Part shown: one piece after another, positions 4,361-43,800 of the stretch
How positions within the stretch are numbered: the first letter of the stretch is position 1
Layout: every line of letters starts with the position of its first letter
Origin: Mizuhopecten yessoensis
Taxonomy: Eukaryota
Assembly (NCBI RefSeq): GCF_002113885.1
Contig: NW_018408893.1
Coordinates: forward strand, 1-64,000
DNA: 64,000 bases
Reading direction: 5' to 3'
Notes under the pieces: generated by a model
The model's database searches: none
The model's input: only the letters and a program-made list of their open reading frames with translations
Told to the model about the DNA's origin: nothing
Position numbers and translations under genes: made by a program

Positions 4361-5646
4361 CTAAAACTTTATCTGTCCCTATGCTGTAGTGCTATTCTAT
4401 CAATGGTATTTTTTGGCACCAATATTAACCTACAAACATCAAGCACGACTTCTCAGAGAGTTATTTACAGCTAGGATAGCTTGTATTTTTATTCAGTATA
4501 TTTGAAGTCTTCATAATAGAAATAGGTAAACCTCTTGATAAAATTTCAGACTAATATATTGTTTTGATATAAAACCTTGATACCAATATTCACTGATATT
4601 CTATTTTAGTTACTGATCAATGTTGCCATATAAAACGTACTGATATTTCATCAGCGACTTGTTTTCTTATTAGAAATCCGTTATATTCGATATATATTGT
4701 TTGACACCCCACCCCCTGGTAATCACTATTATTACGTCTAAATGTTTTTTTTTAAAGAATGTTCACTGATAGGTAGTTAATTTGTATGGTTAAAACAGTT
4801 GATATTTTTTCTGATAATTTTGTTGATTTGTAATCACTGCTATTTCGTTTGTGACTTTAAATAGTATATTCACTGATTTCTTTCCGGTGATATTTTCATA
4901 CTAGTAGCAAGCGGTTTCAACGGCACAGATTACATAAATTTGGCTATAGATAATTTATTTTGATGCTAATAATCGTTTACGTTGCTCTTGTGGTTTTGTT
5001 GATTATTATTAATCACTGCTATTTTATGTGTGATGTTTTATGTTGTAATAACTAATTTTCTCCGTGATTTATTTCGATATTATAAATCACTGATATATCA
5101 CTCATCATGTATTATTTTGACAGTAGTATTCCACAATATTAAACTATGGATTTAGTTGTGCACTTGTATCTTTTCGAACTTATTTATAACTTTTCGTTCA
5201 AGTCAGTCGTTTTGTAAGGTAAATAGTGTACGTTTGTTATATATTAACATAAGCACATAAGTGATTTTTTGCAGTTTAAATGGCACAATTTATTCAAGTA
5301 TCGCTAATATGTATTGTACTTAATTGACTCAAACATCTATCTGTATATATGTATATTTTCTGTTGTTCTCCCGTGATTACCAGTTTGCCCAATTTCATTT
5401 ATTTGATATGTATTTTGTTAGCGGACACCGCTCAGACCTGTTTTATGTCCGCCTGCGTATTAGCATGTTTCCTGTCATTATTTTAAAATAATACATCTAT
5501 TGCGGTTTGTGGTAGCTGGGAGTGTTTATCGGCGCAATGTTATTTTTGCCATCTTTTATATAATGATTGAGCGTTATTTAACAAGCAGCTAGCATGTTGA
5601 CAGCTTTTTGAAAAATATTTTTATTTGATTCGATATGAATACTAAC

Positions 5647-34840: not shown

Positions 34841-37800
34841 TCAGCTGCACACTTCCACCATGACAGACTCTGTCTTGTTTGACGTCTCCTCCCGACAGGT
34901 CACATGGAGGGAACCCTCCCTAAAATACACAGAAGTTAAACCATAGAAATTCACCTCCTTGTACATTTTGTCACTACACTGTTATATAACATTCCTAGGT
35001 TTTGCCACTTCGGCCTTGCACCAATGACCCACTGGCCCTGCAGGTCTGGTTTTATTCAGTCTGATGTCCTACCAACAGCGAAGTCATTTAAGGAGTGCTA
35101 GTGATTGTAGATGATCCGATGGGTTAACCACTCGGCCACCACAGCCCACTGTTCCTTGCCAAATCAAGATTCATCCATGCAAGTTTTTGACTAATACAAT
35201 GTATCAAACATTTAACTCATAATCTTCACAATGACTCTCTTCTTACTATGCACGTTAAATAGTTTACGAAAAAAATACAATTAGAGTCACGTTACTCATG
35301 ATCAACACATAAAAAGAAATCCCAATTTTTACTGTACATGACAGGAGTTAACTTCATCTAAGTAAAACCAATAATCCTTATCTACAATACAAATGTAGAA
35401 ACAATTTTTACAGACTTTGTTTTAATGCTTCAACAAGAAAAATATAGTCGTTTTTCCTGATAACAAAAATTGACTCACCTTCTTAGATGGAAGGTTACTA
35501 ATACTTTAGCTGCTTCTGGTAAGTCTCTCATCACAAGCTGTAGAGAAAAGGAACACATATATTTATTCATATAGCATCTATGATGGTATGGTGGCCTTTT
35601 TATCCAGATTTGCCAGGATTTGAACTTGAAGCTGGCACAACTAGGCATTAAGGAGATAAGGTATACTGTGTTTCTTGCCATGCATAATCCCCATTGTTAG
35701 AAGTTGTGCATGTTACAATTTGTAGTTTGAGAAATAGCGATGACAACAATTATTTCCAAACTGACTGACAGATGGATGGAAGCCTGACCACAGACGAAAA
35801 GCTTTTCGAACAACCCACTATCTGATAATATGGCTAAATAAGGAAACAGAGACCTTGAAATATGTTGGCAGTATGCAATATCTCCAATGAAATATGGGCG
35901 ATCTTATTAAGGTTTTGCTTTACAAAAATCCAAAAGTTAGCATGATATGCTAAAATCTTTAAATAATATGCAATATTTGACAGTTTCACTTCAGTGATTG
36001 CCTGCTTAACAAATCATGTGTAAATTTGTGTAAATCCAGATTTTGGATATATGTAACTGTTCACACATAAAACTTTCTAAACAGGAGCCTAGAACAAACT
36101 AAACCGTGGACTTCATCTGTCCTTACTGACCTTAGCAAGGTCATCTGCAGTGTCCGGCTGTTGAAGGTCACCACACTCACACAGATCCATCTGGAGGGAG
36201 GTCTGATGTTCCCCCAAAATCACAGTCTCATGTTTACGGGATGGCAGTGGTGTCAGGGATGGGAACACAGGCTGCAGGTTTGTCGCCCCATTGCTACATG
36301 ACTAAATAAATGCACAAATTCCATATCAATTTGGTTGAAATAGAGTTGTGTAAGTAAATATTATTAATACACTTCTGTAACATCTAATACCATTTGATCT
36401 TTAAAACTAAAACATTTTTGTCTCTTTTTGTTTAAAATATCCAATATGTTCAAGTCTACTTATGTTTTGTACACAATTTAAATGAAAAAAACTACATGGC
36501 AAGAAAAGATATAGAAACTTACCCGTAAACACACTGCTTTAGACAAGCATTCTATTTCATTGTTTTCTGTGTTCTCTTTTACCTCTGTGGCATCACAGCC
36601 TGTTAGTATACCAGCCTACAAACAATACAGGAAAATACTCTATATCGGAAAATGTTCCACACATTAATTTTCGTCCTTTTCACACCTTTGTCAATACTTA
36701 AACTTTTACCCTTTTCACACCTTTGTAACGAGGGCGACTTTGTCTTTGGTTTGTTTGTGTTTTATGTCCTATTAATAGCTATGTTTATTTAAGGAGGTTT
36801 TGGTGGTGGAAGAAAGCCGGAGTTCCCAGAGAAAAACCACCGACCTGGAGACAGTACTTGGTGACTGCCCGAAGTAGGCCTCGAATCCGCGACCCAGTGG
36901 TGGATGGCTAGTGGAAGCAGAATGTCAGACGCCTTAACCACTTGGCCACCGACTTTGTCATGACAGCAAATGTTAGTAAAGAGTTTAGCATACACAGTAA
37001 TCATTTCAATTTAAAGAGCAGTATCAATGCCTAGAGAATATATACATTTTTGTATATTCAGATATGCAGTTATTAAAAATTTATAAAATTTACTAAAAAA
37101 TACTTTCAAAACAAATTATGATATAAAACAAAGTCAATAATTATCATATCATAATCAGTTGTACAGCCCCCAAACATGCATACCAATTATACAAAATACA
37201 ACTACATGCATAAACAAAAGCATATTACGGGTGAATGATTTCTAATTACCCAGGTTGATGTTTGACTCTATCGTATTGTGAAATGAAATTCAAACTTTAT
37301 ATAAGTTCCCTATTAATGATTAATGTTTCACATCTGAAGGAAACAGTAGCCTGAAAAAACACTTTCTTGTGCCAGCAAAAATGGTTGTCTTCTTCACTTG
37401 GTAAAATAGTTTGTATAAATGTAAATATTTAATGATGACTTAATAAAAGATTTTATCAACTATGGTAGATGTCATTGCAAAATGAGAAAACTAGCCCAAA
37501 CTTCATATGCAATCCTCTCCCATATATAGTATCAGGCCTTTAGCTAAAAAACAATATAGATAAACCACAACAGGATGAGACAGACTGATCATCCCCTGTT
37601 TCAACACCATGATTTATTTTCTGTCCTGTGGGTACATTAAATGTCTGTAATCTTAAGTGACTCGATTGCCCTACCTGTTTTGCTGCGCCGATCGCTATAA
37701 TTTCGTCTGGGGGAATGGAGCTTAGAACTTCAGCAGATTTGATATAGCCTTTAATGGTTTTCTGAACCAGAGGCATTTTTGCCCCACCGCCACAAACTAT

Positions 37801-40800
37801 CACCTATTGAAAGAGATAAATGTCTTATTTATTTTTCATCATAACATTGAGAAATAATTGATGGAAGGGAAATAACTCTTCTCATGTTTAAAAAAAAAGT
37901 TAATATGATTTCTTTCCTTGAAGAATACATTGACAATATGGATATGTTTGAATTGAAATTGAATTAACAAAACAAGTTATATAGATAAAATATTGAAAAC
38001 ATATTCTCAGACAAATCTGATTAATTTATATGTAACATGTATTATTTCAATATGTTTAAAGGAGCTTGCCTTGTCTACTTGGTCAGTGGATATACCGGCA
38101 TCACTACAGGCTGCATCTATAAGGCTGGTACACTGCTGCATCAGGAATCCTACCTGGTTCTCTAACCTCGCCCTAAATACACAGGTGATACTTCAAAATG
38201 ACACATTTAATTGAGGTACAAAATAAGATGTTTTCTGTATAGACACATCTGTATTAAACTAAAATCACTTTGTATAAATCATGGTAGCATGTGTCCCTCA
38301 CACACTCCTGTTTGTAGTTTCACTTTGTTAAGTTGGACACCAATCATGTCAGGTGTAATTACCTCTCCAATGACCATGTTTGGCCAAGGGAGACCTTAGA
38401 GCACCTTGTTCCTTTAGCATGTTTGTCTAGATCAGCTGACCACATAATTGGTCACTGGTCACTCCACCATCTGATCATCCTCCGATGTCAGACGCATGCA
38501 TAACTCATGAATGTCAAAACAAGATTTGCTGTATTTAATAACACTACTTCTTAACAGTGATACTCAACAATGCTAAGTATAATGTATACAATTTCATATT
38601 TCAATTAGGGGAACATTGTGCCAGCAGTTCTGAAATTAAAAGGATTTGCTTTAATTGGATTCGGGAAAAGCAGACTACACACTGCAGTGTTTTTTCCTAC
38701 CTAAATACAACAGTCTGCATTTTACTACGTGAATTAGGAAAATATAGTACTTTTTTTTTTTTTTTTTTTTTTTTTATTAAAATGGCACTTTTTTTGCTAG
38801 GATAAGTTGCATGTATGTAAACTTAGGCAAAAAAAACCCCAAAACTCCATGACAATACATGGAAATTGGCTGCAGTCAAATATAAATTCATATTAACAGT
38901 GTTTATCAAGTAAGAGGAGTTTAAAGAACATTTGCTGTACTTGACAGTTTGTTTGGTGGTCATACTTCTCCTCTGACAAAACTTCTCACGAGTGTCATAC
39001 AGAAGCAGTTTAATATGTGACAGTTTCTGTACTTGACAGTGTTTGGTGGTCATACTTCTCCTCTGACAAAACTTCTCACGAGTGTCATACAGAAGCAGTT
39101 TAATATGTCACAGTTTCTGTACTTGACAGTGTTTGGTGGTCATACTTCTCCTCTGACAAAACTTGGCCAGGAAGACCTTAAAACACCAATTTAATGTAGC
39201 ATGCTTGTGTCCAGATCAGCTGACCACAAATGGACAGTCAGTGACCCCTCCTTTGTCTGGTCATCAGGGTCTGGTGTTTTCCAAGCATGCGTAAGTCTGT
39301 CTGTTATTTTATGACTGAAATTTTGCATTTTTAAAAGTTATTAAATAAAATGTATTTTATCTAACTCTTGTAAATCTGTTTGGTACTACATGACTGGCAT
39401 TTTGCACAAAATGTTAAGAAATGAAATTTATTTAATTTTACCTAAATCCATACACTGTAGCTTACCTACATGATAAACACATTGTGCAGGCCTTAAACAT
39501 TACAATGGAGCTATCGATACCCAACAGTCTATCTGATAAACTAACTTGCTATTTTTTTTGGCATGTAGCTGATTTTTCAGCATCTATTTGTCAAGTCTTA
39601 CTATTTCGGAAAGAAACTCCCCATGTTTAATCATCTGCCACTTTTAAATTTTCAAACCAACAGAATTGCCTACAACTTGCATTATGTTATTGTATAATCG
39701 TTTCATTAAATAGAAAAAAACTTACACTACAGCACTTTATGGCACTGATATATCCCCCAAAAAGGGTTGTTGTAAGAACTTTTTACATGTTTACAGATTT
39801 TTCCTGTAAAAAACAAATTGACAGGTTGGCAAGTATGCCTCAGAAGGTAAGAAATTTCTTATATAAAACAGATTGACAAAACTTGTTTCAGAGCACATCA
39901 GGTAAATTGATAAATTTCTAGATCAAACAGGTCATTTTAAGCCATTAATATGTCTTTCACATCACAACCATATAGAGTGAGTGCTAACATCACTGAATAG
40001 TTGGCTTTAAAGTGCCAAATACATATGTTAAAATATTAAATAGAATTTTCCATTTTAAATGGCTGACTGTATTAATTGTTGCGAATGGGGATTGTGCATA
40101 TTAATTTGATATCTTCAAATTTATTTCAAAATCAAAGATTTTGTTATACATTACAGTCCCACAGCTGTAGTGAAAGGTTCTATAAATTAGCTTGTACACT
40201 TGATGTGATCACAGGGGTACTCGATTCTCACGAGTGTCATACAGAAGCAGTTTAATATGTGACAGTTTCTGTACTTGAATGTTTGTTTGGTGGTCATACT
40301 TCTCCTCTGGCAAAACTTGGCCAGGAAGACCTTAAAACACCAATTTAATGTAGCATGCTTGTGTCCAGATCAGCTGACCACAAATGGACAGTCAGTGACC
40401 ACTCCTTGGTCTGGCAACATGGGTCTGGTGTTTTCCAAGCATGCGCAAGTCTGTCTGTTACTTTGTGACTGAAATTTCACATTTAAGTTATCAAATAAAA
40501 TGTATTTTATCTAACTCTTGTAAGTCTTATCTAGTACTACATGACTGGCATTTTGCACAAAATGTTAAGAAATAAAATTTATTTAATTTTACCTAAATCC
40601 ATACATTGTAGCCTACCTACATGATAAACACACTGTGCAGGCCTTAAACATTACAATGGAGCTATCGATACCCAACAGTCTACCTGATAACTAACTTGCT
40701 ATTTTTTTTGGCATGTAGCTGATTTTTCAGCATCTATTTGTCAAGTCTTACTATTTCGGAAAGAAACTCCCAATGTTTTATCGTCACTTTTAAATTTTCA

Positions 40801-43800
40801 AACCAACAGAATTGCCTACAACTTGCATTATGTTATTGTATAATCGTTTCATTAAATAGTAAAAACCTTACACTACAGCACTTTATGGCACTGATATATC
40901 CCCCAAAAAGGGTTGTTGTAAGAACTTTTTACATGTTTATAGATTTCGCTATGTAGTTTTTCCTGTAAAAAACAAATCGACAGGTTGGCAAGTATGCCTC
41001 AGAAGGTAAGAAATTTCTTATATAAAACAGAATGACAAAACTTGTTTCAGAGCACATCAGGTAAATTGATAAATTTCTAGATCAAACAGGTCATTTTAAG
41101 CCATTAATATGTCTTTCTCATCACAACCATGTAGAGCGAGTGCTAACATCACTGAATAGTTGGCTTTAAAGTGCCAAATATATATGTTAAATTACTAAAT
41201 AGAATTTTTCATTTTAAATGGCTGACTGAATTAATTGTTGCGAATGGTGATTGTGCATATTAATCTAAAATTTTCAAACTTATTTTGACATCAAGGATGA
41301 TTTTGTTAAATAACATCACAGCTTGTACACTTGATGTGATCACAGGGGTACTCAATTCTCACGAGTGTCATACAGAAGCAGTTCAATATGTGACAGTTTC
41401 TGTACTTGAATGTTTGTTTGGTGGTCATACTTCTCCTCTGGCAAAACTTGGCCAGGAAGACCTTAAAACACCAATTTAATGTAGCATGCTTTTGTCCAGA
41501 TCAGCTGACCACAAATGGACAGTCAGTGACCACTCCTTGGTCTGGTCATCAGGGTCTGTTGTGTCTAAAGCATGCATGAGTTTCCTCAAGTATTAACAAT
41601 ACAGAAATTACTGTATGCATTTATCATAAAATAATAAACTTGCATGAATTCATGTTTTTAAATGCAATGCAAAAATAACAATATGAAAGTAGTAAGATGT
41701 TGATGACTAATTAACCAGTATAAGATATATAGCAAGACTCGGTTGATGAAAGATTTCAGGATGATACTAGGGTTACTCACAGAATGATAGCTAGTTATTC
41801 TGACTATCTTATAAGAATAACTGTTTAAAATTGAATAAGTTTAAAGTACAGTTTGTATTAAAAACTTCAAAATGACAAAAAAAATACAGATTTTAAATCA
41901 ACAAGAGTAAAGTGAAAAACATGACAACCAATTATCACAGGGTATACGTCAGACCCTTTCTTTCTAAACATTACGAAAAACATATTTGCACACCGCTTCA
42001 GTTTCCAACTGGAGAACGGAATCATGACATCAGAATAACAGCTAAATTTGATATGCCTTTTACATGACAAACTTTCATCATCTAGCTACAACAATTCATT
42101 TCAGTTTAGTACCAGATGAAAATTTTAATCTGACCTGGTCATTGTTTTAACAAAGTTTTCAGCAATATTTCAGATCAGATGGGAATATTTCAAAATTGAC
42201 CATCACATGTCGAATTTTGGAAATTCCAATGCTAACCAAGAGAGTATTTTGCTTTTACTTGACAACAAACATGTAATTTGGAGTAGCAGAGAAATGTATG
42301 AGGTTCGTATGATCATGTCAAGTCACACAGCTAACATGTACTATCAAATATGTATTAATAAAGGTAGGATTTAAACAGATTCTGTGACATACTTCATCTC
42401 TGGTTAAATGGACTGTTATTCATTATTATGAAGATGAAACATACCGTGTGAACTAGTTATGAAAGGGAACTCTAATCAAGTTCCATTATCAAACACAGTG
42501 AAATCTGTCTAGAAAATAACTTGCGTTGATTAATATGCATTTTCTCTTCATGAATACTCAACAAGAATTTCATGGTTGCAATATACCCACATTATATAAC
42601 AATAATCTTTATTAGAAACAACTAAAATCTGATTTCAATGATGATCAGTAAGTATTCACAGCAAATAATAATAACAGTAACTCCTAAAGTTTGTTTTCTT
42701 CCTTTGAGCTAAATAAGGAAATAAGGCTGTTGTAGGTTTACCTGGATACATTGTTGTGAAAGTCTACACCCTCGAACAGGGAGTCTACAGCACAGGACGC
42801 ATTATCAAGGGTTGATAGTGTGTGTTTACACCGCTCTGCTGCCATGTTGAGTTTACTGAGAGACCGTCGACTCTCTGTAACATCGAGTTTGTACTGTCTG
42901 AAACACCAACAAATACAATGACAGATACAGGCAACAAAACACTGGGTCACGTATTCTCTCCAGTCCATTTTAGTGAAGCAGTAGTGCTGTAAAGTTAAAA
43001 TTCAAAATTTGATTACTTATAAATTGACTGTTTTTTTATAATTTTCTTAATAGAAGACTTAATTGTTAATTTTGTAATTTACATAATTCATTTAAATAAA
43101 ATCTTAGTAAAACATTTTGTAAAAGTATGAATATCTTTTTCTGAAGATCAAAATTTATGAGAATGGGTTAATTACCTGAAGAATTCTGTTGCTAAGTAGT
43201 CTGTTAGGGCCTTGGTAAACTTTGTACCCGATAGCTGGGTACTGTTGACGGAGCCCATGATGCGATACAGACCATTGTGCTCCTTTACTACCGACACGCT
43301 GCTCGACTCTCCGCCCAAGCGGAATACCAACGTACAACTGAAATTAATAATAATTTGAGGTTCTTATATACCGCTTTATCACAACCTAGTTCGTAGGTCG
43401 TCTCAAAGCGGTGCACAAATTATTATCCGTGGTTATAGGGCCTTTGCAACCAGCCAATACCTTTTTCAGCTTCCTTTGGGAGCATACAGCCGGAGCTGCC
43501 ATTTCGGCACTAACAGCTAGCATTCAACAATTCTAGTACTGCCCAACCATGTACTCATTTACAGCTGAGTAAACTGGAACAAGTGGAGTAAAGTATCTTG
43601 CTCAAGGATACAACACAGTGCTGTGCCGTGCCGTGACTCGAACACTCAACCCTTCGGTCACGAGCCCGGCGTCCTACCACAAGACTACCGTGCCTCCAAT
43701 GTGTAGCACATAAATCAATAATACTCATCATTACATCTGTAGCCATTTTCCTGACCTTGAAAATCTGAAGACAATTTTCACCTGAAGAGAAACCTTGGTA

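What the first reader, a model, noticed from the sequence alone, without database searches (positions are those of the whole stretch)
38344..41575. Four-copy cluster of an apparent box H/ACA guide RNA in one HSPA14 intron
Seen: on the host sense strand, four ~155-165 nt segments share hairpin-H box-hairpin-ACA architecture. Copy A has diverged from copies B-D, yet the H box stays ANANNA at the same position (AAAGGA vs ACATTA), the lower stem covaries (AGGTG/CACCT vs TGGTG/CACCA), and ACA stays 14 nt from the upper stem while flanks are unalignable. Established: these are H/ACA hallmarks, and animal intronic snoRNAs are usually one per intron, released by exonucleolytic trimming. Inference: an old duplication plus a recent 1.14 kb amplification made a polycistronic intron that would need endonucleolytic or alternative processing, or would yield long sno-capped RNAs. 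I do not know HSPA14 as a snoRNA host.
Basis: partly seen in the sequence, partly recalled or inferred. Interest (0 to 1): 0.8.

Follow-up and report, generated by a model that had tools for sequence, protein, structure and literature searches.

The report
Tandem U1-guide scaRNA-like genes in intron
One intron of a mollusc HSPA14-like chaperone gene carries four copies of a small box H/ACA guide RNA gene that looks like SCARNA18/U109, the RNA that directs pseudouridine formation at position 6 of U1 spliceosomal RNA; it is a real but fairly ordinary gene cluster of a layout already known from flies and rice.

Summary
Four 156-165 nt segments on the minus (host-sense) strand share hairpin, H box, hairpin, ACA. 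Three (B, C, D) are 94-97% alike and lie in a 1.15 kb tandem unit. The fourth (A) is about 76% alike, with unalignable flanks. Spliced RNA-seq reads place all four in one 4,569-nt GT-AG intron of an Hsp70-family, HSPA14-like gene.

Neither the segments nor the spacer occur elsewhere in the 988-Mb assembly.

The only Rfam match is snoU109 (SCARNA18), at 37.8 bits against a cut-off of 43. It is the best match to that family in the genome. The 3' pocket pairs with this genome's own U1 5' end around U6, 5+3 Watson-Crick pairs in B-D and 4+3 in A. The pocket bases that differ between the two lineages are the ones that do not pair. A rival target is 18S U753.

Limits:
- No discrete ~160-nt RNA was shown. 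The poly(A)-type libraries give no peak and contig depths are ambiguous.
- The orthologous intron in another invertebrate is 241 nt and empty, so the location is lineage-specific.

Several H/ACA genes in one intron are known from Drosophila and rice. This scan also noted a tandem C/D array in a TCP1 intron of this genome. I class it as a new member of a known kind.

The parts
41413..41577 (-). Copy D, most upstream H/ACA unit. 5' hairpin, H box ACAUUA, 3' hairpin with pocket UUUUAAGG / AGUAUGAC, then ACA.
   Evidence: Rfam snoU109 full-length match, 37.8 bits, E 0.0011 in 3.5 kb and best in the genome. Fold z -2.76. A 75-nt RNA-library contig of depth 162 lies on 41502-41576.
40282..40445 (-). 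Copy C. Identical to D from the H box to ACA; 8 substitutions, all in the 5' hairpin.
   Evidence: Rfam snoU109 30.2 bits on the 3' hairpin.
39130..39291 (-). Copy B. One change in the 3' upper stem (G-C to G.U) and a 2-nt shorter tail after ACA.
   Evidence: Rfam snoU109 25.5 bits.
38346..38501 (-). Copy A, the old paralogue, about 76% identical to B-D. H box AAAGGA, pocket CUCUAAGG / GGUAAUUA. Its 3' end lies 173 nt upstream of the 3' splice site.
   Evidence: Own-genome model match of 137.6 bits. No Rfam match. RNA contig depth over it equals the intron background.
38950..39129 (-). Two extra 90-nt tandem units, each repeating the 3' half of B's 3' hairpin, the ACA and 55 nt of downstream flank. 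They lack a 5' arm, so they are presumably dead fragments.
   Evidence: Repeat family D2. BLAST fragments at 38947-38984 and 39040-39074.
38173..42741 (-). Host intron of 4569 nt, GT-AG, holding all four copies.
   Evidence: Splice joint seen in X20, X23 and X24 reads and in an X5 contig. Splice-site sequences.
42742..42897 (-). Upstream host exon, Hsp70 nucleotide-binding domain, about residues 240-299 of Hsc70.
   Evidence: PDB sequence search, E 1e-10 to Hsc70/Hsp70. Read depth 20-40.
38070..38172 (-). Downstream host exon of 34 codons, followed by a GC-AG intron.
   Evidence: Three-frame translation, sequence, and loose ends of reads joining to the next exon.

Best explanation
These are genes for a box H/ACA guide RNA homologous to vertebrate SCARNA18 (U109). 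They were duplicated once long ago (A against the ancestor of B-D) and then amplified recently, by local tandem duplication of a 1.15-kb unit, inside one intron of an HSPA14-like gene. Inferred mechanism: the host pre-mRNA is transcribed by RNA polymerase II. Dyskerin, Nop10, Nhp2 and Naf1/Gar1 assemble on each hairpin-H-hairpin-ACA unit. The intron is spliced out (this step is shown) and nucleases remove the unprotected spacers, which requires internal cuts because the units are in series. Each mature RNA of about 160 nt then uses the pocket of its 3' hairpin to pair with the first ten nucleotides of U1 snRNA and presents U6 (possibly U5) to dyskerin for conversion to pseudouridine. The 5' hairpin has no detectable target, as in vertebrate U109. 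The recent copies are probably redundant. The guide half (H box to ACA) has stayed unchanged in them while the 5' hairpin drifts.
For: - Architecture and fold are present in all four copies.
- The only Rfam family matched is snoU109, full length on D at 37.8 bits, E 0.0011. The 5' stem, the segment CAUGCUACAUUAAA spanning the stem and H box, and the AGUAU side of the pocket are letter-identical to the vertebrate consensus. D and C are the best matches to that family in the 988-Mb genome.
- U109 is SCARNA18 and guides U1 pseudouridine 6 through its 3' hairpin with 4+5 pairs (PMC1636440 table; PMC1687206).
- This genome's U1 starts AUACUUACCUGGUAC.
- The B-D pocket gives 5+3 Watson-Crick pairs around U6. 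This is the only all-Watson-Crick site of 8 pairs or more among 1001 uridines scanned in U1, U2, U5, 18S, 5.8S and half of 28S.
- Copy A keeps 4+3 pairs. The pocket positions that differ between A and B-D are exactly those that do not pair with U1 or would lie beyond its capped 5' end (read directly).
- Summed arm energies favour U1 over the 18S rival once both lineages are considered: -4.2 and -3.2 against -4.1 and -1.9 kcal/mol.
- Selection on the old duplicate: flanks are unalignable while the RNA segment stays about 76% identical, with three pairs changed on both sides.
- In the recent copies there are 0 substitutions in the 72 aligned columns from H box to tail between C and D, against 4.5% in the spacer (about p 0.04). 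The 5' lower stem of D has a compensated change, G-C to U-A.
- A U1-6 H/ACA guide exists and has been tested in Drosophila (PMC3884663).
Against: - The Rfam score is below the family's gathering cut-off (37.8 against 43). For the whole genome the E-value is only 0.07. Copy A does not match the family at all.
- The U1 duplex is short (8 pairs, 7 for A), with only 3 pairs on the 3' side of the target.
- An equally stable rival site exists for B-D in 18S.
- Only part of 28S, and neither U4 nor U6, could be scanned.
- No discrete RNA was demonstrated. Three raw-read RNA runs show zero or near-zero depth on the copies. In the one contig library, copy A sits at intron background.
- A canonical CAB box UGAG is absent. 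Only GGAG (5' domain, all copies) and AAGU (3' loop, B-D) are seen.
- The orthologous intron of another invertebrate is empty.
- Taken whole, C and D are no better conserved than the spacer: 95.1% against 95.5%.
Confidence: 0.62

Rival explanations
1. The RNA is a nucleolar H/ACA snoRNA whose 3' pocket guides pseudouridylation of 18S rRNA at U753 (context CAUU[U]ACUUUGAAAA). It would do this instead of, or as well as, acting on U1.
For: - This is the longest complementarity found for B-D: 3+8 pairs, 3 of them G.U. Its arm energy equals the U1 site, -4.1 against -4.2 kcal/mol.
- By my own reading of the conserved 18S context, this U corresponds to human 18S pseudouridine 801, which sits in a run of uridines (existence of the site: bioRxiv 10.1101/2024.01.08.574649). 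The positional equivalence comes from memory and was not tested.
- Dual snRNA/rRNA pockets are documented for Drosophila pugU1-6 (PMC3884663).
Against: - Copy A pairs poorly with this site: 3+5 with 4 G.U, -1.9 kcal/mol. The two U-to-C changes in A break pairs with 18S but are neutral for U1.
- Only 3 pairs, one a wobble, lie on the 5' side.
- No Rfam rRNA-guide family matches, whereas snoU109 does.
- The chance expectation for such a G.U-tolerant match among 1001 sites is about 0.06 by my estimate.
Confidence: 0.15
2. The array is evolutionary debris. One copy at most is a working gene, and the tandem copies and fragments are neutral products of unequal crossing-over that are not processed into stable RNPs.
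For: - C and D taken whole diverge as fast as the spacer, 95.1% against 95.5%.
- Truncated 90-nt fragments show sloppy duplication.
- B has lost two pairs of a small 5' sub-hairpin and D one pair of the 5' upper stem.
- There are no read peaks on any copy in three RNA runs, and copy A is at intron background in X5.
- The orthologous intron elsewhere is empty.
Against: - The guide half is unchanged between C and D, and the one change in B keeps the pair.
- A compensated stem change occurs in D.
- A has kept boxes, spacing, fold and U1-pairing bases while its flanks decayed.
- These four are the only detectable members in the genome, so if the function exists it must be supplied from here.
- The libraries examined are not suited to 160-nt structured RNAs.
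Confidence: 0.15
3. The serial arrangement yields stable long RNAs capped at both ends by H/ACA RNPs (D-spacer-C, C-spacer-B), like mammalian sno-lncRNAs such as SLERT. These would accompany or replace the monomeric RNAs.
For: - In the RNA-library contigs of X5, a 1171-nt contig runs from inside D through the whole spacer into C (40371-41531). Its mean depth is 85, like the exons (66-84) and about ten times the other intron contigs (4-9).
- Sparse intronic reads in the raw runs fall mostly between D and B.
Against: - Contig depth is a flat mean and collapses repeated units.
- The contig differs from the reference by 21 letters and 12 gap positions, so that animal may carry a different, possibly larger, array, which would raise depth without any RNA stabilisation.
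- The depth step at 41576 coincides with the edge of the tandem array as well as with the 5' end of D.
- My rough read count is about 11 reads in 2.5 kb between D and B against about 4 in 2 kb elsewhere, which is not significant.
Confidence: 0.08

Closest known systems
SCARNA18 / U109 (Rfam RF01233 snoU109), the vertebrate H/ACA scaRNA guiding U1 pseudouridine 6
   Same: Two-hairpin H/ACA plan. The 5' lower stem and H-box segment (UGCAUG ... CAUGCUACAUUAAA) are near-identical. The 3' pocket has AGUAU pairing to U1 nt 1-5 and ..AGG pairing to C8 C9 U10. The 5' hairpin has no assigned target. It is intronic (PMC1636440; PMC1687206).
   Different: The score is below the family cut-off. The 5' hairpin is about 35 nt longer. 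There are 3 rather than 4 pairs on the 3' side of the target. No clear UGAG CAB box. The host gene differs (HSPA14-like rather than the human host listed as MGC23909). It is multiplied in tandem within one intron, not spread by retroposition.
Drosophila pugU1-6 (scaRNA guiding U1 position 6)
   Same: An invertebrate H/ACA guide for the same U1 position, shown to work in extract. It also has a second, rRNA-directed complementarity (PMC3884663), as B-D may have for 18S.
   Different: The fly RNA was isolated with WDR79, whereas nothing is known about binding or localisation of the scallop-like RNA.
[quoted passage not shown]
   Same: Several H/ACA units, often paralogous isoforms, in a single intron of a protein-coding host. 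This implies processing beyond simple exonucleolytic trimming (PMC2780460; Huang et al. 2004 J Mol Biol, as cited in PMC5932544).
   Different: A different phylum. Here the cluster holds one family only, and includes very young copies and truncated fragments.
sno-lncRNAs / SLERT (mammalian long RNAs capped by snoRNPs at both ends; from my own knowledge)
   Same: An intron with two or more snoRNA units in series, which is the precondition for such RNAs. One contig depth hints at a protected inter-unit segment.
   Different: No evidence of defined ends or accumulation. It is only a possibility here.
Tandem array of at least 8 box C/D snoRNA genes in a TCP1 intron of this same genome
   Same: Same genome, same layout (tandem amplification inside one chaperone-gene intron), and the same verdict from its follow-up.
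   Different: C/D class with an rRNA methylation target. I did not re-examine it.

Membership tests
Box H/ACA guide RNA (class) | Hairpin - hinge - hairpin - tail secondary structure | tested here: met
   MFE and consensus folds of all four copies. z -2.8 and -3.0.
Box H/ACA guide RNA (class) | H box ANANNA in the hinge | tested here: met
   ACAUUA in B-D and AAAGGA in A, in the same alignment columns.
Box H/ACA guide RNA (class) | ACA triplet 3 nt from the mature 3' end, 14-16 nt from the target position in the pocket | tested here: inconclusive
   ACA is present 14 nt after the base of the upper stem in all copies. The mature 3' end was not observed.
Box H/ACA guide RNA (class) | Internal loop (pseudouridylation pocket) with bipartite complementarity to a known substrate | tested here: met
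   3' pocket: 5+3 (B-D) and 4+3 (A) pairs flanking U6 of this genome's U1. No target found for the 5' pocket.
Box H/ACA guide RNA (class) | Accumulates as a discrete RNA of about 130-170 nt bound by dyskerin, Nop10, Nhp2 and Gar1 | not testable with these tools
   The only reads call gave no peak in poly(A)-type libraries and ambiguous contig depths.
Rfam RF01233 snoU109 / SCARNA18 | Covariance-model score at or above the gathering cut-off (43 bits) | tested here: not met
   D 37.8, C 30.2, B 25.5 bits, A none. Still the only family hit and the best locus in the genome.
Rfam RF01233 snoU109 / SCARNA18 | 3' hairpin pocket complementary to U1 around pseudouridine 6 | tested here: met
   Family target from PMC1636440.
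Rfam RF01233 snoU109 / SCARNA18 | CAB box (ugAG) in a terminal loop, Cajal-body localisation | tested here: inconclusive
   No UGAG. GGAG is invariant in a loop of the 5' domain in all four copies, and AAGU in the 3' loop of B-D aligns with cAGU of the family consensus. Localisation is not testable.
Rfam RF01233 snoU109 / SCARNA18 | Orthologues traceable in related species | tested here: inconclusive
   The orthologous intron in the one related contig found (L007) is 241 nt with no H/ACA unit. Two metagenome pattern scans were blank. No mollusc genomes are available in the tools.
Intronic snoRNA gene cluster (Drosophila/rice type) | Two or more snoRNA units within one spliced intron of a Pol II host gene, same strand | tested here: met
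   Splice joint 38173-42741 in four runs. All copies lie inside it on the host strand.
sno-lncRNA | Stable RNA spanning the inter-unit segment with snoRNP-protected ends | tested here: inconclusive
   A 1171-nt contig of depth 85 across D-spacer-C in X5. It is confounded by repeat collapse and possible copy-number difference.

The most novel reading that the evidence does not exclude
Because the H/ACA units lie in series in one intron, the segments between them may survive as long RNAs capped by H/ACA RNPs at both ends, in the manner of SLERT. That would make this a first invertebrate example of sno-lncRNA biogenesis, produced from a chaperone gene and varying in copy number between animals.
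Probability: 0.1. Interest if true: 0.6.

Novelty: new member of a known kind. Interest (0 to 1): 0.35.

Why it matters
If the assignment holds, the guide for U1 pseudouridine 6 is recognisably the same RNA in molluscs and vertebrates: same 5' stem, H-box segment and pocket. That pushes the origin of SCARNA18 back to the bilaterian ancestor. Pseudouridines 5 and 6 sit in the part of U1 that reads 5' splice sites. The locus also captures snoRNA family growth by local tandem duplication in progress, showing old paralogue, young copies, truncated fragments, a compensated stem change and a frozen guide half. It adds a second case in this genome of a chaperone-gene intron used as a snoRNA array. 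It does not reveal a new kind of system.

Tried and rejected
- **Rfam at gathering thresholds over the whole window:** no match. Only the permissive scan found snoU109.
- **Dispersed repeat or transposon origin:** rejected. BLAST of the RNA segment and of the spacer, the family model and my own model R1 all find this locus only.
- **A small exon splitting the copies into different introns:** checked, because Hsc70 residues about 300-334 were missing between the two obvious exons. The missing exon lies at 38070-38172, downstream of copy A, so all copies share one intron.
- **rRNA family searches of the genome:** failed three times. I located rDNA with a short conserved 18S pattern instead.
- **Masked 28S:** in that locus 28S reads N from locus position 4542 on. 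I did not fill it. I had requested two other rDNA stretches (L020, L021) in the same turn, before I saw the Ns, and I did not read or use them. The target scan therefore covers only the first 1.8 kb of 28S.
- **Target of the 5' hairpin pocket:** nothing with at least 3+3 pairs shared by the copies.
- **Orthologues:** exon-by-exon protein word searches gave nothing or only one contig. Two metagenome DNA pattern scans were blank. I avoided a pattern that could hit vertebrate SCARNA18.
- **Joined exons:** the host gene was searched exon by exon by reference.
- **Expression:** the three raw-read RNA runs show no depth on the copies, so they neither support nor exclude a small RNA. The sno-lncRNA reading of the X5 contig depths is left as a low-probability rival.
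- **Retroposition:** a 25-nt A-run lies between the B fragments and A. I considered a snoRNA retroposon but did not pursue it. Local duplication explains the homology of A and B-D more simply.


Full report
**What is there.** Read on the minus strand, the stretch 38346-41577 holds four segments of 156-165 nt with one plan. The plan is:
- a long 5' hairpin closed by a GCAUGC-type stem;
- a single-stranded hinge with an ANANNA box (ACAUUA in B, C, D; AAAGGA in A);
- a 3' hairpin with a large symmetrical internal loop;
- an ACA triplet 14 nt after the base of the upper stem.

Coordinates are A 38346-38501, B 39130-39291, C 40282-40445 and D 41413-41577. MFE folds give the two-hairpin shape for every copy. 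D and A fold better than dinucleotide shuffles, with z -2.76 and -2.95. The opposite strand also folds (z -2.3), as any hairpin does, but it carries no boxes.

**Duplication history.**
- B, C and D are 94-97% identical and sit in a tandem unit of 1131-1154 nt.
- A is 76-77% identical to them, and the 60 nt on either side of A cannot be aligned with their flanks.
- The 3' end of B is followed by two extra 90-nt tandem units. Each repeats only the 3' half of the 3' hairpin, the ACA and 55 nt of flank.
- Neither the RNA segment nor the 1-kb spacer occurs anywhere else in the 988-Mb assembly.
- The Rfam family model and a covariance model I built from the four copies also find only this locus.
- The amplification is therefore local, not a dispersed repeat. 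One caveat applies: those genome searches score only the best candidates of a loose first pass.

**Host gene and intron.**
- ORF pieces on the minus strand at 43175-43330, 42742-42897 and 37672-37803 match the Hsp70 nucleotide-binding domain at about residues 196-250, 240-299 and 335-376. One exon matches the fungal Ssz1-type protein best.
- The apparent gap of about 35 residues is filled by a small exon at 38070-38172, downstream of copy A.
- RNA reads from three studies and one RNA contig join 42742 directly to 38172, skipping 4569 nt with GT..AG ends. All four copies therefore lie in one spliced intron on the host's sense strand. Copy A ends 173 nt before the 3' splice site.
- The next intron uses a GC donor.
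- I searched exons one by one by reference and built no joined coding sequence.
What I tested shows only an Hsp70-family gene with an Ssz1-like exon.

**What kind of RNA.**
- At curated thresholds Rfam finds nothing in the window.
- With permissive thresholds the only family that matches the copies is RF01233 snoU109. The match is full length on D (37.8 bits, cut-off 43, E 0.0011 for the 3.5 kb searched) and covers the 3' hairpin on C and B (30.2 and 25.5 bits). A has no match.
- The match is not just shape. The 5' stem (UGCAUG), the 14 letters spanning the closing stem and H box (CAUGCUACAUUAAA), the AGUAU side of the 3' pocket and several upper-stem letters equal the vertebrate consensus.
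- Searched over the whole genome, D and C are the top matches to that family, at E 0.07.
- U109 is SCARNA18 (PMC1687206). It guides pseudouridine 6 of U1 snRNA through its 3' hairpin with 4+5 pairs (table in PMC1636440).

**Test of the target.**
- I took U1, U2 and U5 from this genome with the Rfam models. I took 18S, 5.8S and the first 1.8 kb of 28S from an rDNA unit found with a short 18S pattern.
- The rest of 28S in that unit reads N and I left it so. Two other rDNA stretches were requested in the same turn, before I saw the Ns (L020, L021), and were not used.
- U1 here begins AUACUUACCUGGUAC.
- In B-D the pocket strand next to ACA (AGUAUGAC) pairs with A1-U5, and the other strand (UUUUAAGG) pairs with C8-U10. 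This leaves U6 and A7 unpaired at the base of the upper stem, the canonical geometry.
- Among 1001 uridines scanned, this is the only site with 8 or more contiguous pairs and no wobble. I estimate about 0.05 such sites by chance.
- Copy A (GGUAAUUA / CUCUAAGG) keeps G.U5, G-C4, U-A3, A-U2 and the same three pairs on the other side.
- The pocket letters that differ between A and B-D fall in two groups. One group would lie beyond the capped 5' end of U1. The other group faces mismatches (G11, U13, C15). Letters that can pair are invariant (read directly). That is the pattern expected if U1 is the shared target, though two lineages make a thin sample.

**A rival target.**
- 18S U753 gives 3+8 pairs with three wobbles for B-D, with the same summed arm energy as U1 (-4.1 against -4.2 kcal/mol).
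- Copy A fits it poorly (-1.9 against -3.2 for U1).
- From memory of the conserved 18S context, this U would correspond to human pseudouridine 801, a site that does exist (bioRxiv 10.1101/2024.01.08.574649). I did not and should not check the human sequence.
- A dual snRNA/rRNA pocket would have a precedent in Drosophila pugU1-6 (PMC3884663).
- No target was found for the 5' pocket, as for vertebrate U109.

**Signs of constraint.**
- The consensus fold has 42 pairs, and three keep pairing through changes on both sides.
  - One is a C-G/U-A swap in a 5' sub-hairpin of A.
  - One is a G-C to U-A change in the 5' lower stem of the young copy D.
- Between C and D there are 8 substitutions, all in the 5' hairpin. 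None falls in the 72 aligned columns from H box to tail, while the spacer differs at 4.5% of sites. By my estimate that is roughly p 0.04.
- B's single change in that half turns G-C into G.U.
- Taken whole, C and D are no better conserved than the spacer (95.1% against 95.5%). The young copies may be largely redundant, or the guide half may be kept alike by gene conversion.

**Expression.** This is the weak point.
- The raw runs cover the exons 20-40 fold and show essentially nothing on the copies. Such libraries seldom capture 160-nt structured RNAs, so this decides nothing.
- In the contig run X5, the values are:

| Contig or region | Coordinates | Mean depth |
|---|---|---|
| 75-nt contig, identical to the first 75 nt of D | 41502-41576 | 162 |
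| 1171-nt contig, from inside D through the spacer into C | 40371-41531 | 85 |
| Other intron contigs, including those over copy A | - | 4-9 |
| Exons | - | 66-84 |

- This could mean stable RNA from the young units, even a long RNA capped by two H/ACA units.
- It could equally reflect collapsed repeats and a larger array in that animal. Its contig differs from the reference by 21 letters and 12 gap positions. The depth step also coincides with the edge of the tandem array.

**Conservation elsewhere.**
- Exon-wise protein word searches found one related contig, from a JGI metagenome (L007). It carries the same three exons with the same boundaries at 77-84% amino-acid identity.
- Its orthologous intron is only 241 nt and holds no H/ACA unit.
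- Two pattern scans of metagenome contigs for the conserved cores were blank.
- The position in HSPA14 is therefore lineage-specific. snoRNA and scaRNA genes are known to change hosts, U109 among them (PMC1687206), so this does not argue against the RNA itself. It does leave the family without a second species.

**Comparison with what is known.**
- In vertebrates the rule is one snoRNA per intron. [quoted passage not shown] 2004, cited in PMC5932544).
- The present locus is therefore a new member of a known kind. It is the first SCARNA18-like candidate I can point to in a mollusc-like genome, multiplied in tandem.
- Release of the individual units must involve internal cleavage, or it leaves sno-capped long RNAs. 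That step is inference.

**Verdict.**
- H/ACA gene identity is very likely (about 0.85).
- Homology with SCARNA18 and U1-6 guiding is the best reading (about 0.6).
- Accumulation and processing are untested.
- Interest is modest.

Noticed in passing
window 38950-39219 (minus strand): A 90-nt unit is repeated three times head to tail. It starts in the loop of B's 3' hairpin and runs through ACA plus 55 nt of flank. This leaves two orphan 3' half-hairpins downstream of copy B.
   Followed up: partly
window 38757-38790 (minus strand): A run of about 25 A lies between the B fragments and copy A. It could be the tail of an old retroposition or just a simple repeat. Reads appear cut there.
   Followed up: no
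window 41355-41410, 40225-40280, 39075-39128 (minus strand): The 55 nt downstream of B, C and D are conserved and contain an imperfect hairpin (ACAGAAACUG ... CUGCUUCUGU). It is also present in the extra 90-nt units and absent downstream of A. Function unknown.
   Followed up: no
window 38068-38069 (minus strand): The intron after the small exon 38070-38172 uses a GC donor (AAG|GCAAGC). Reads joining to the next exon confirm it.
   Followed up: partly
L007:1-1629: A JGI metagenome contig (sample 3300005037) carries three exons of an orthologous HSPA14-like gene from an unidentified invertebrate. Exon boundaries are identical and the introns are short (241 and 334 nt).
   Followed up: partly
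window 40371-41531, run X5: The RNA-library contig over the C-D unit differs from the reference by 21 letters and several indels, including a 9-nt insertion after 41003. This suggests allelic or copy-number variation of the array between animals.
   Followed up: no
L019:4542-10000 (G000:C1046): In this rDNA unit, 28S reads N from locus position 4542, shortly after the last Rfam match (which ends at locus 4400, LSU model position 1455), to the end of the fetched stretch. I left it unfilled, so half of 28S could not be scanned for targets.
   Followed up: no
G000:C5576 and other contigs: At least 16 U1 genes score above the Rfam cut-off. Several are clustered within 25 kb on C5576, and the six U1 loci read have identical 5' halves.
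   Followed up: no
L019:1032 (18S U753): The 3' pocket of copies B-D is complementary (3+8 pairs, three wobbles) to a conserved 18S site that probably corresponds to human pseudouridine 801. This is a possible second target.
   Followed up: partly
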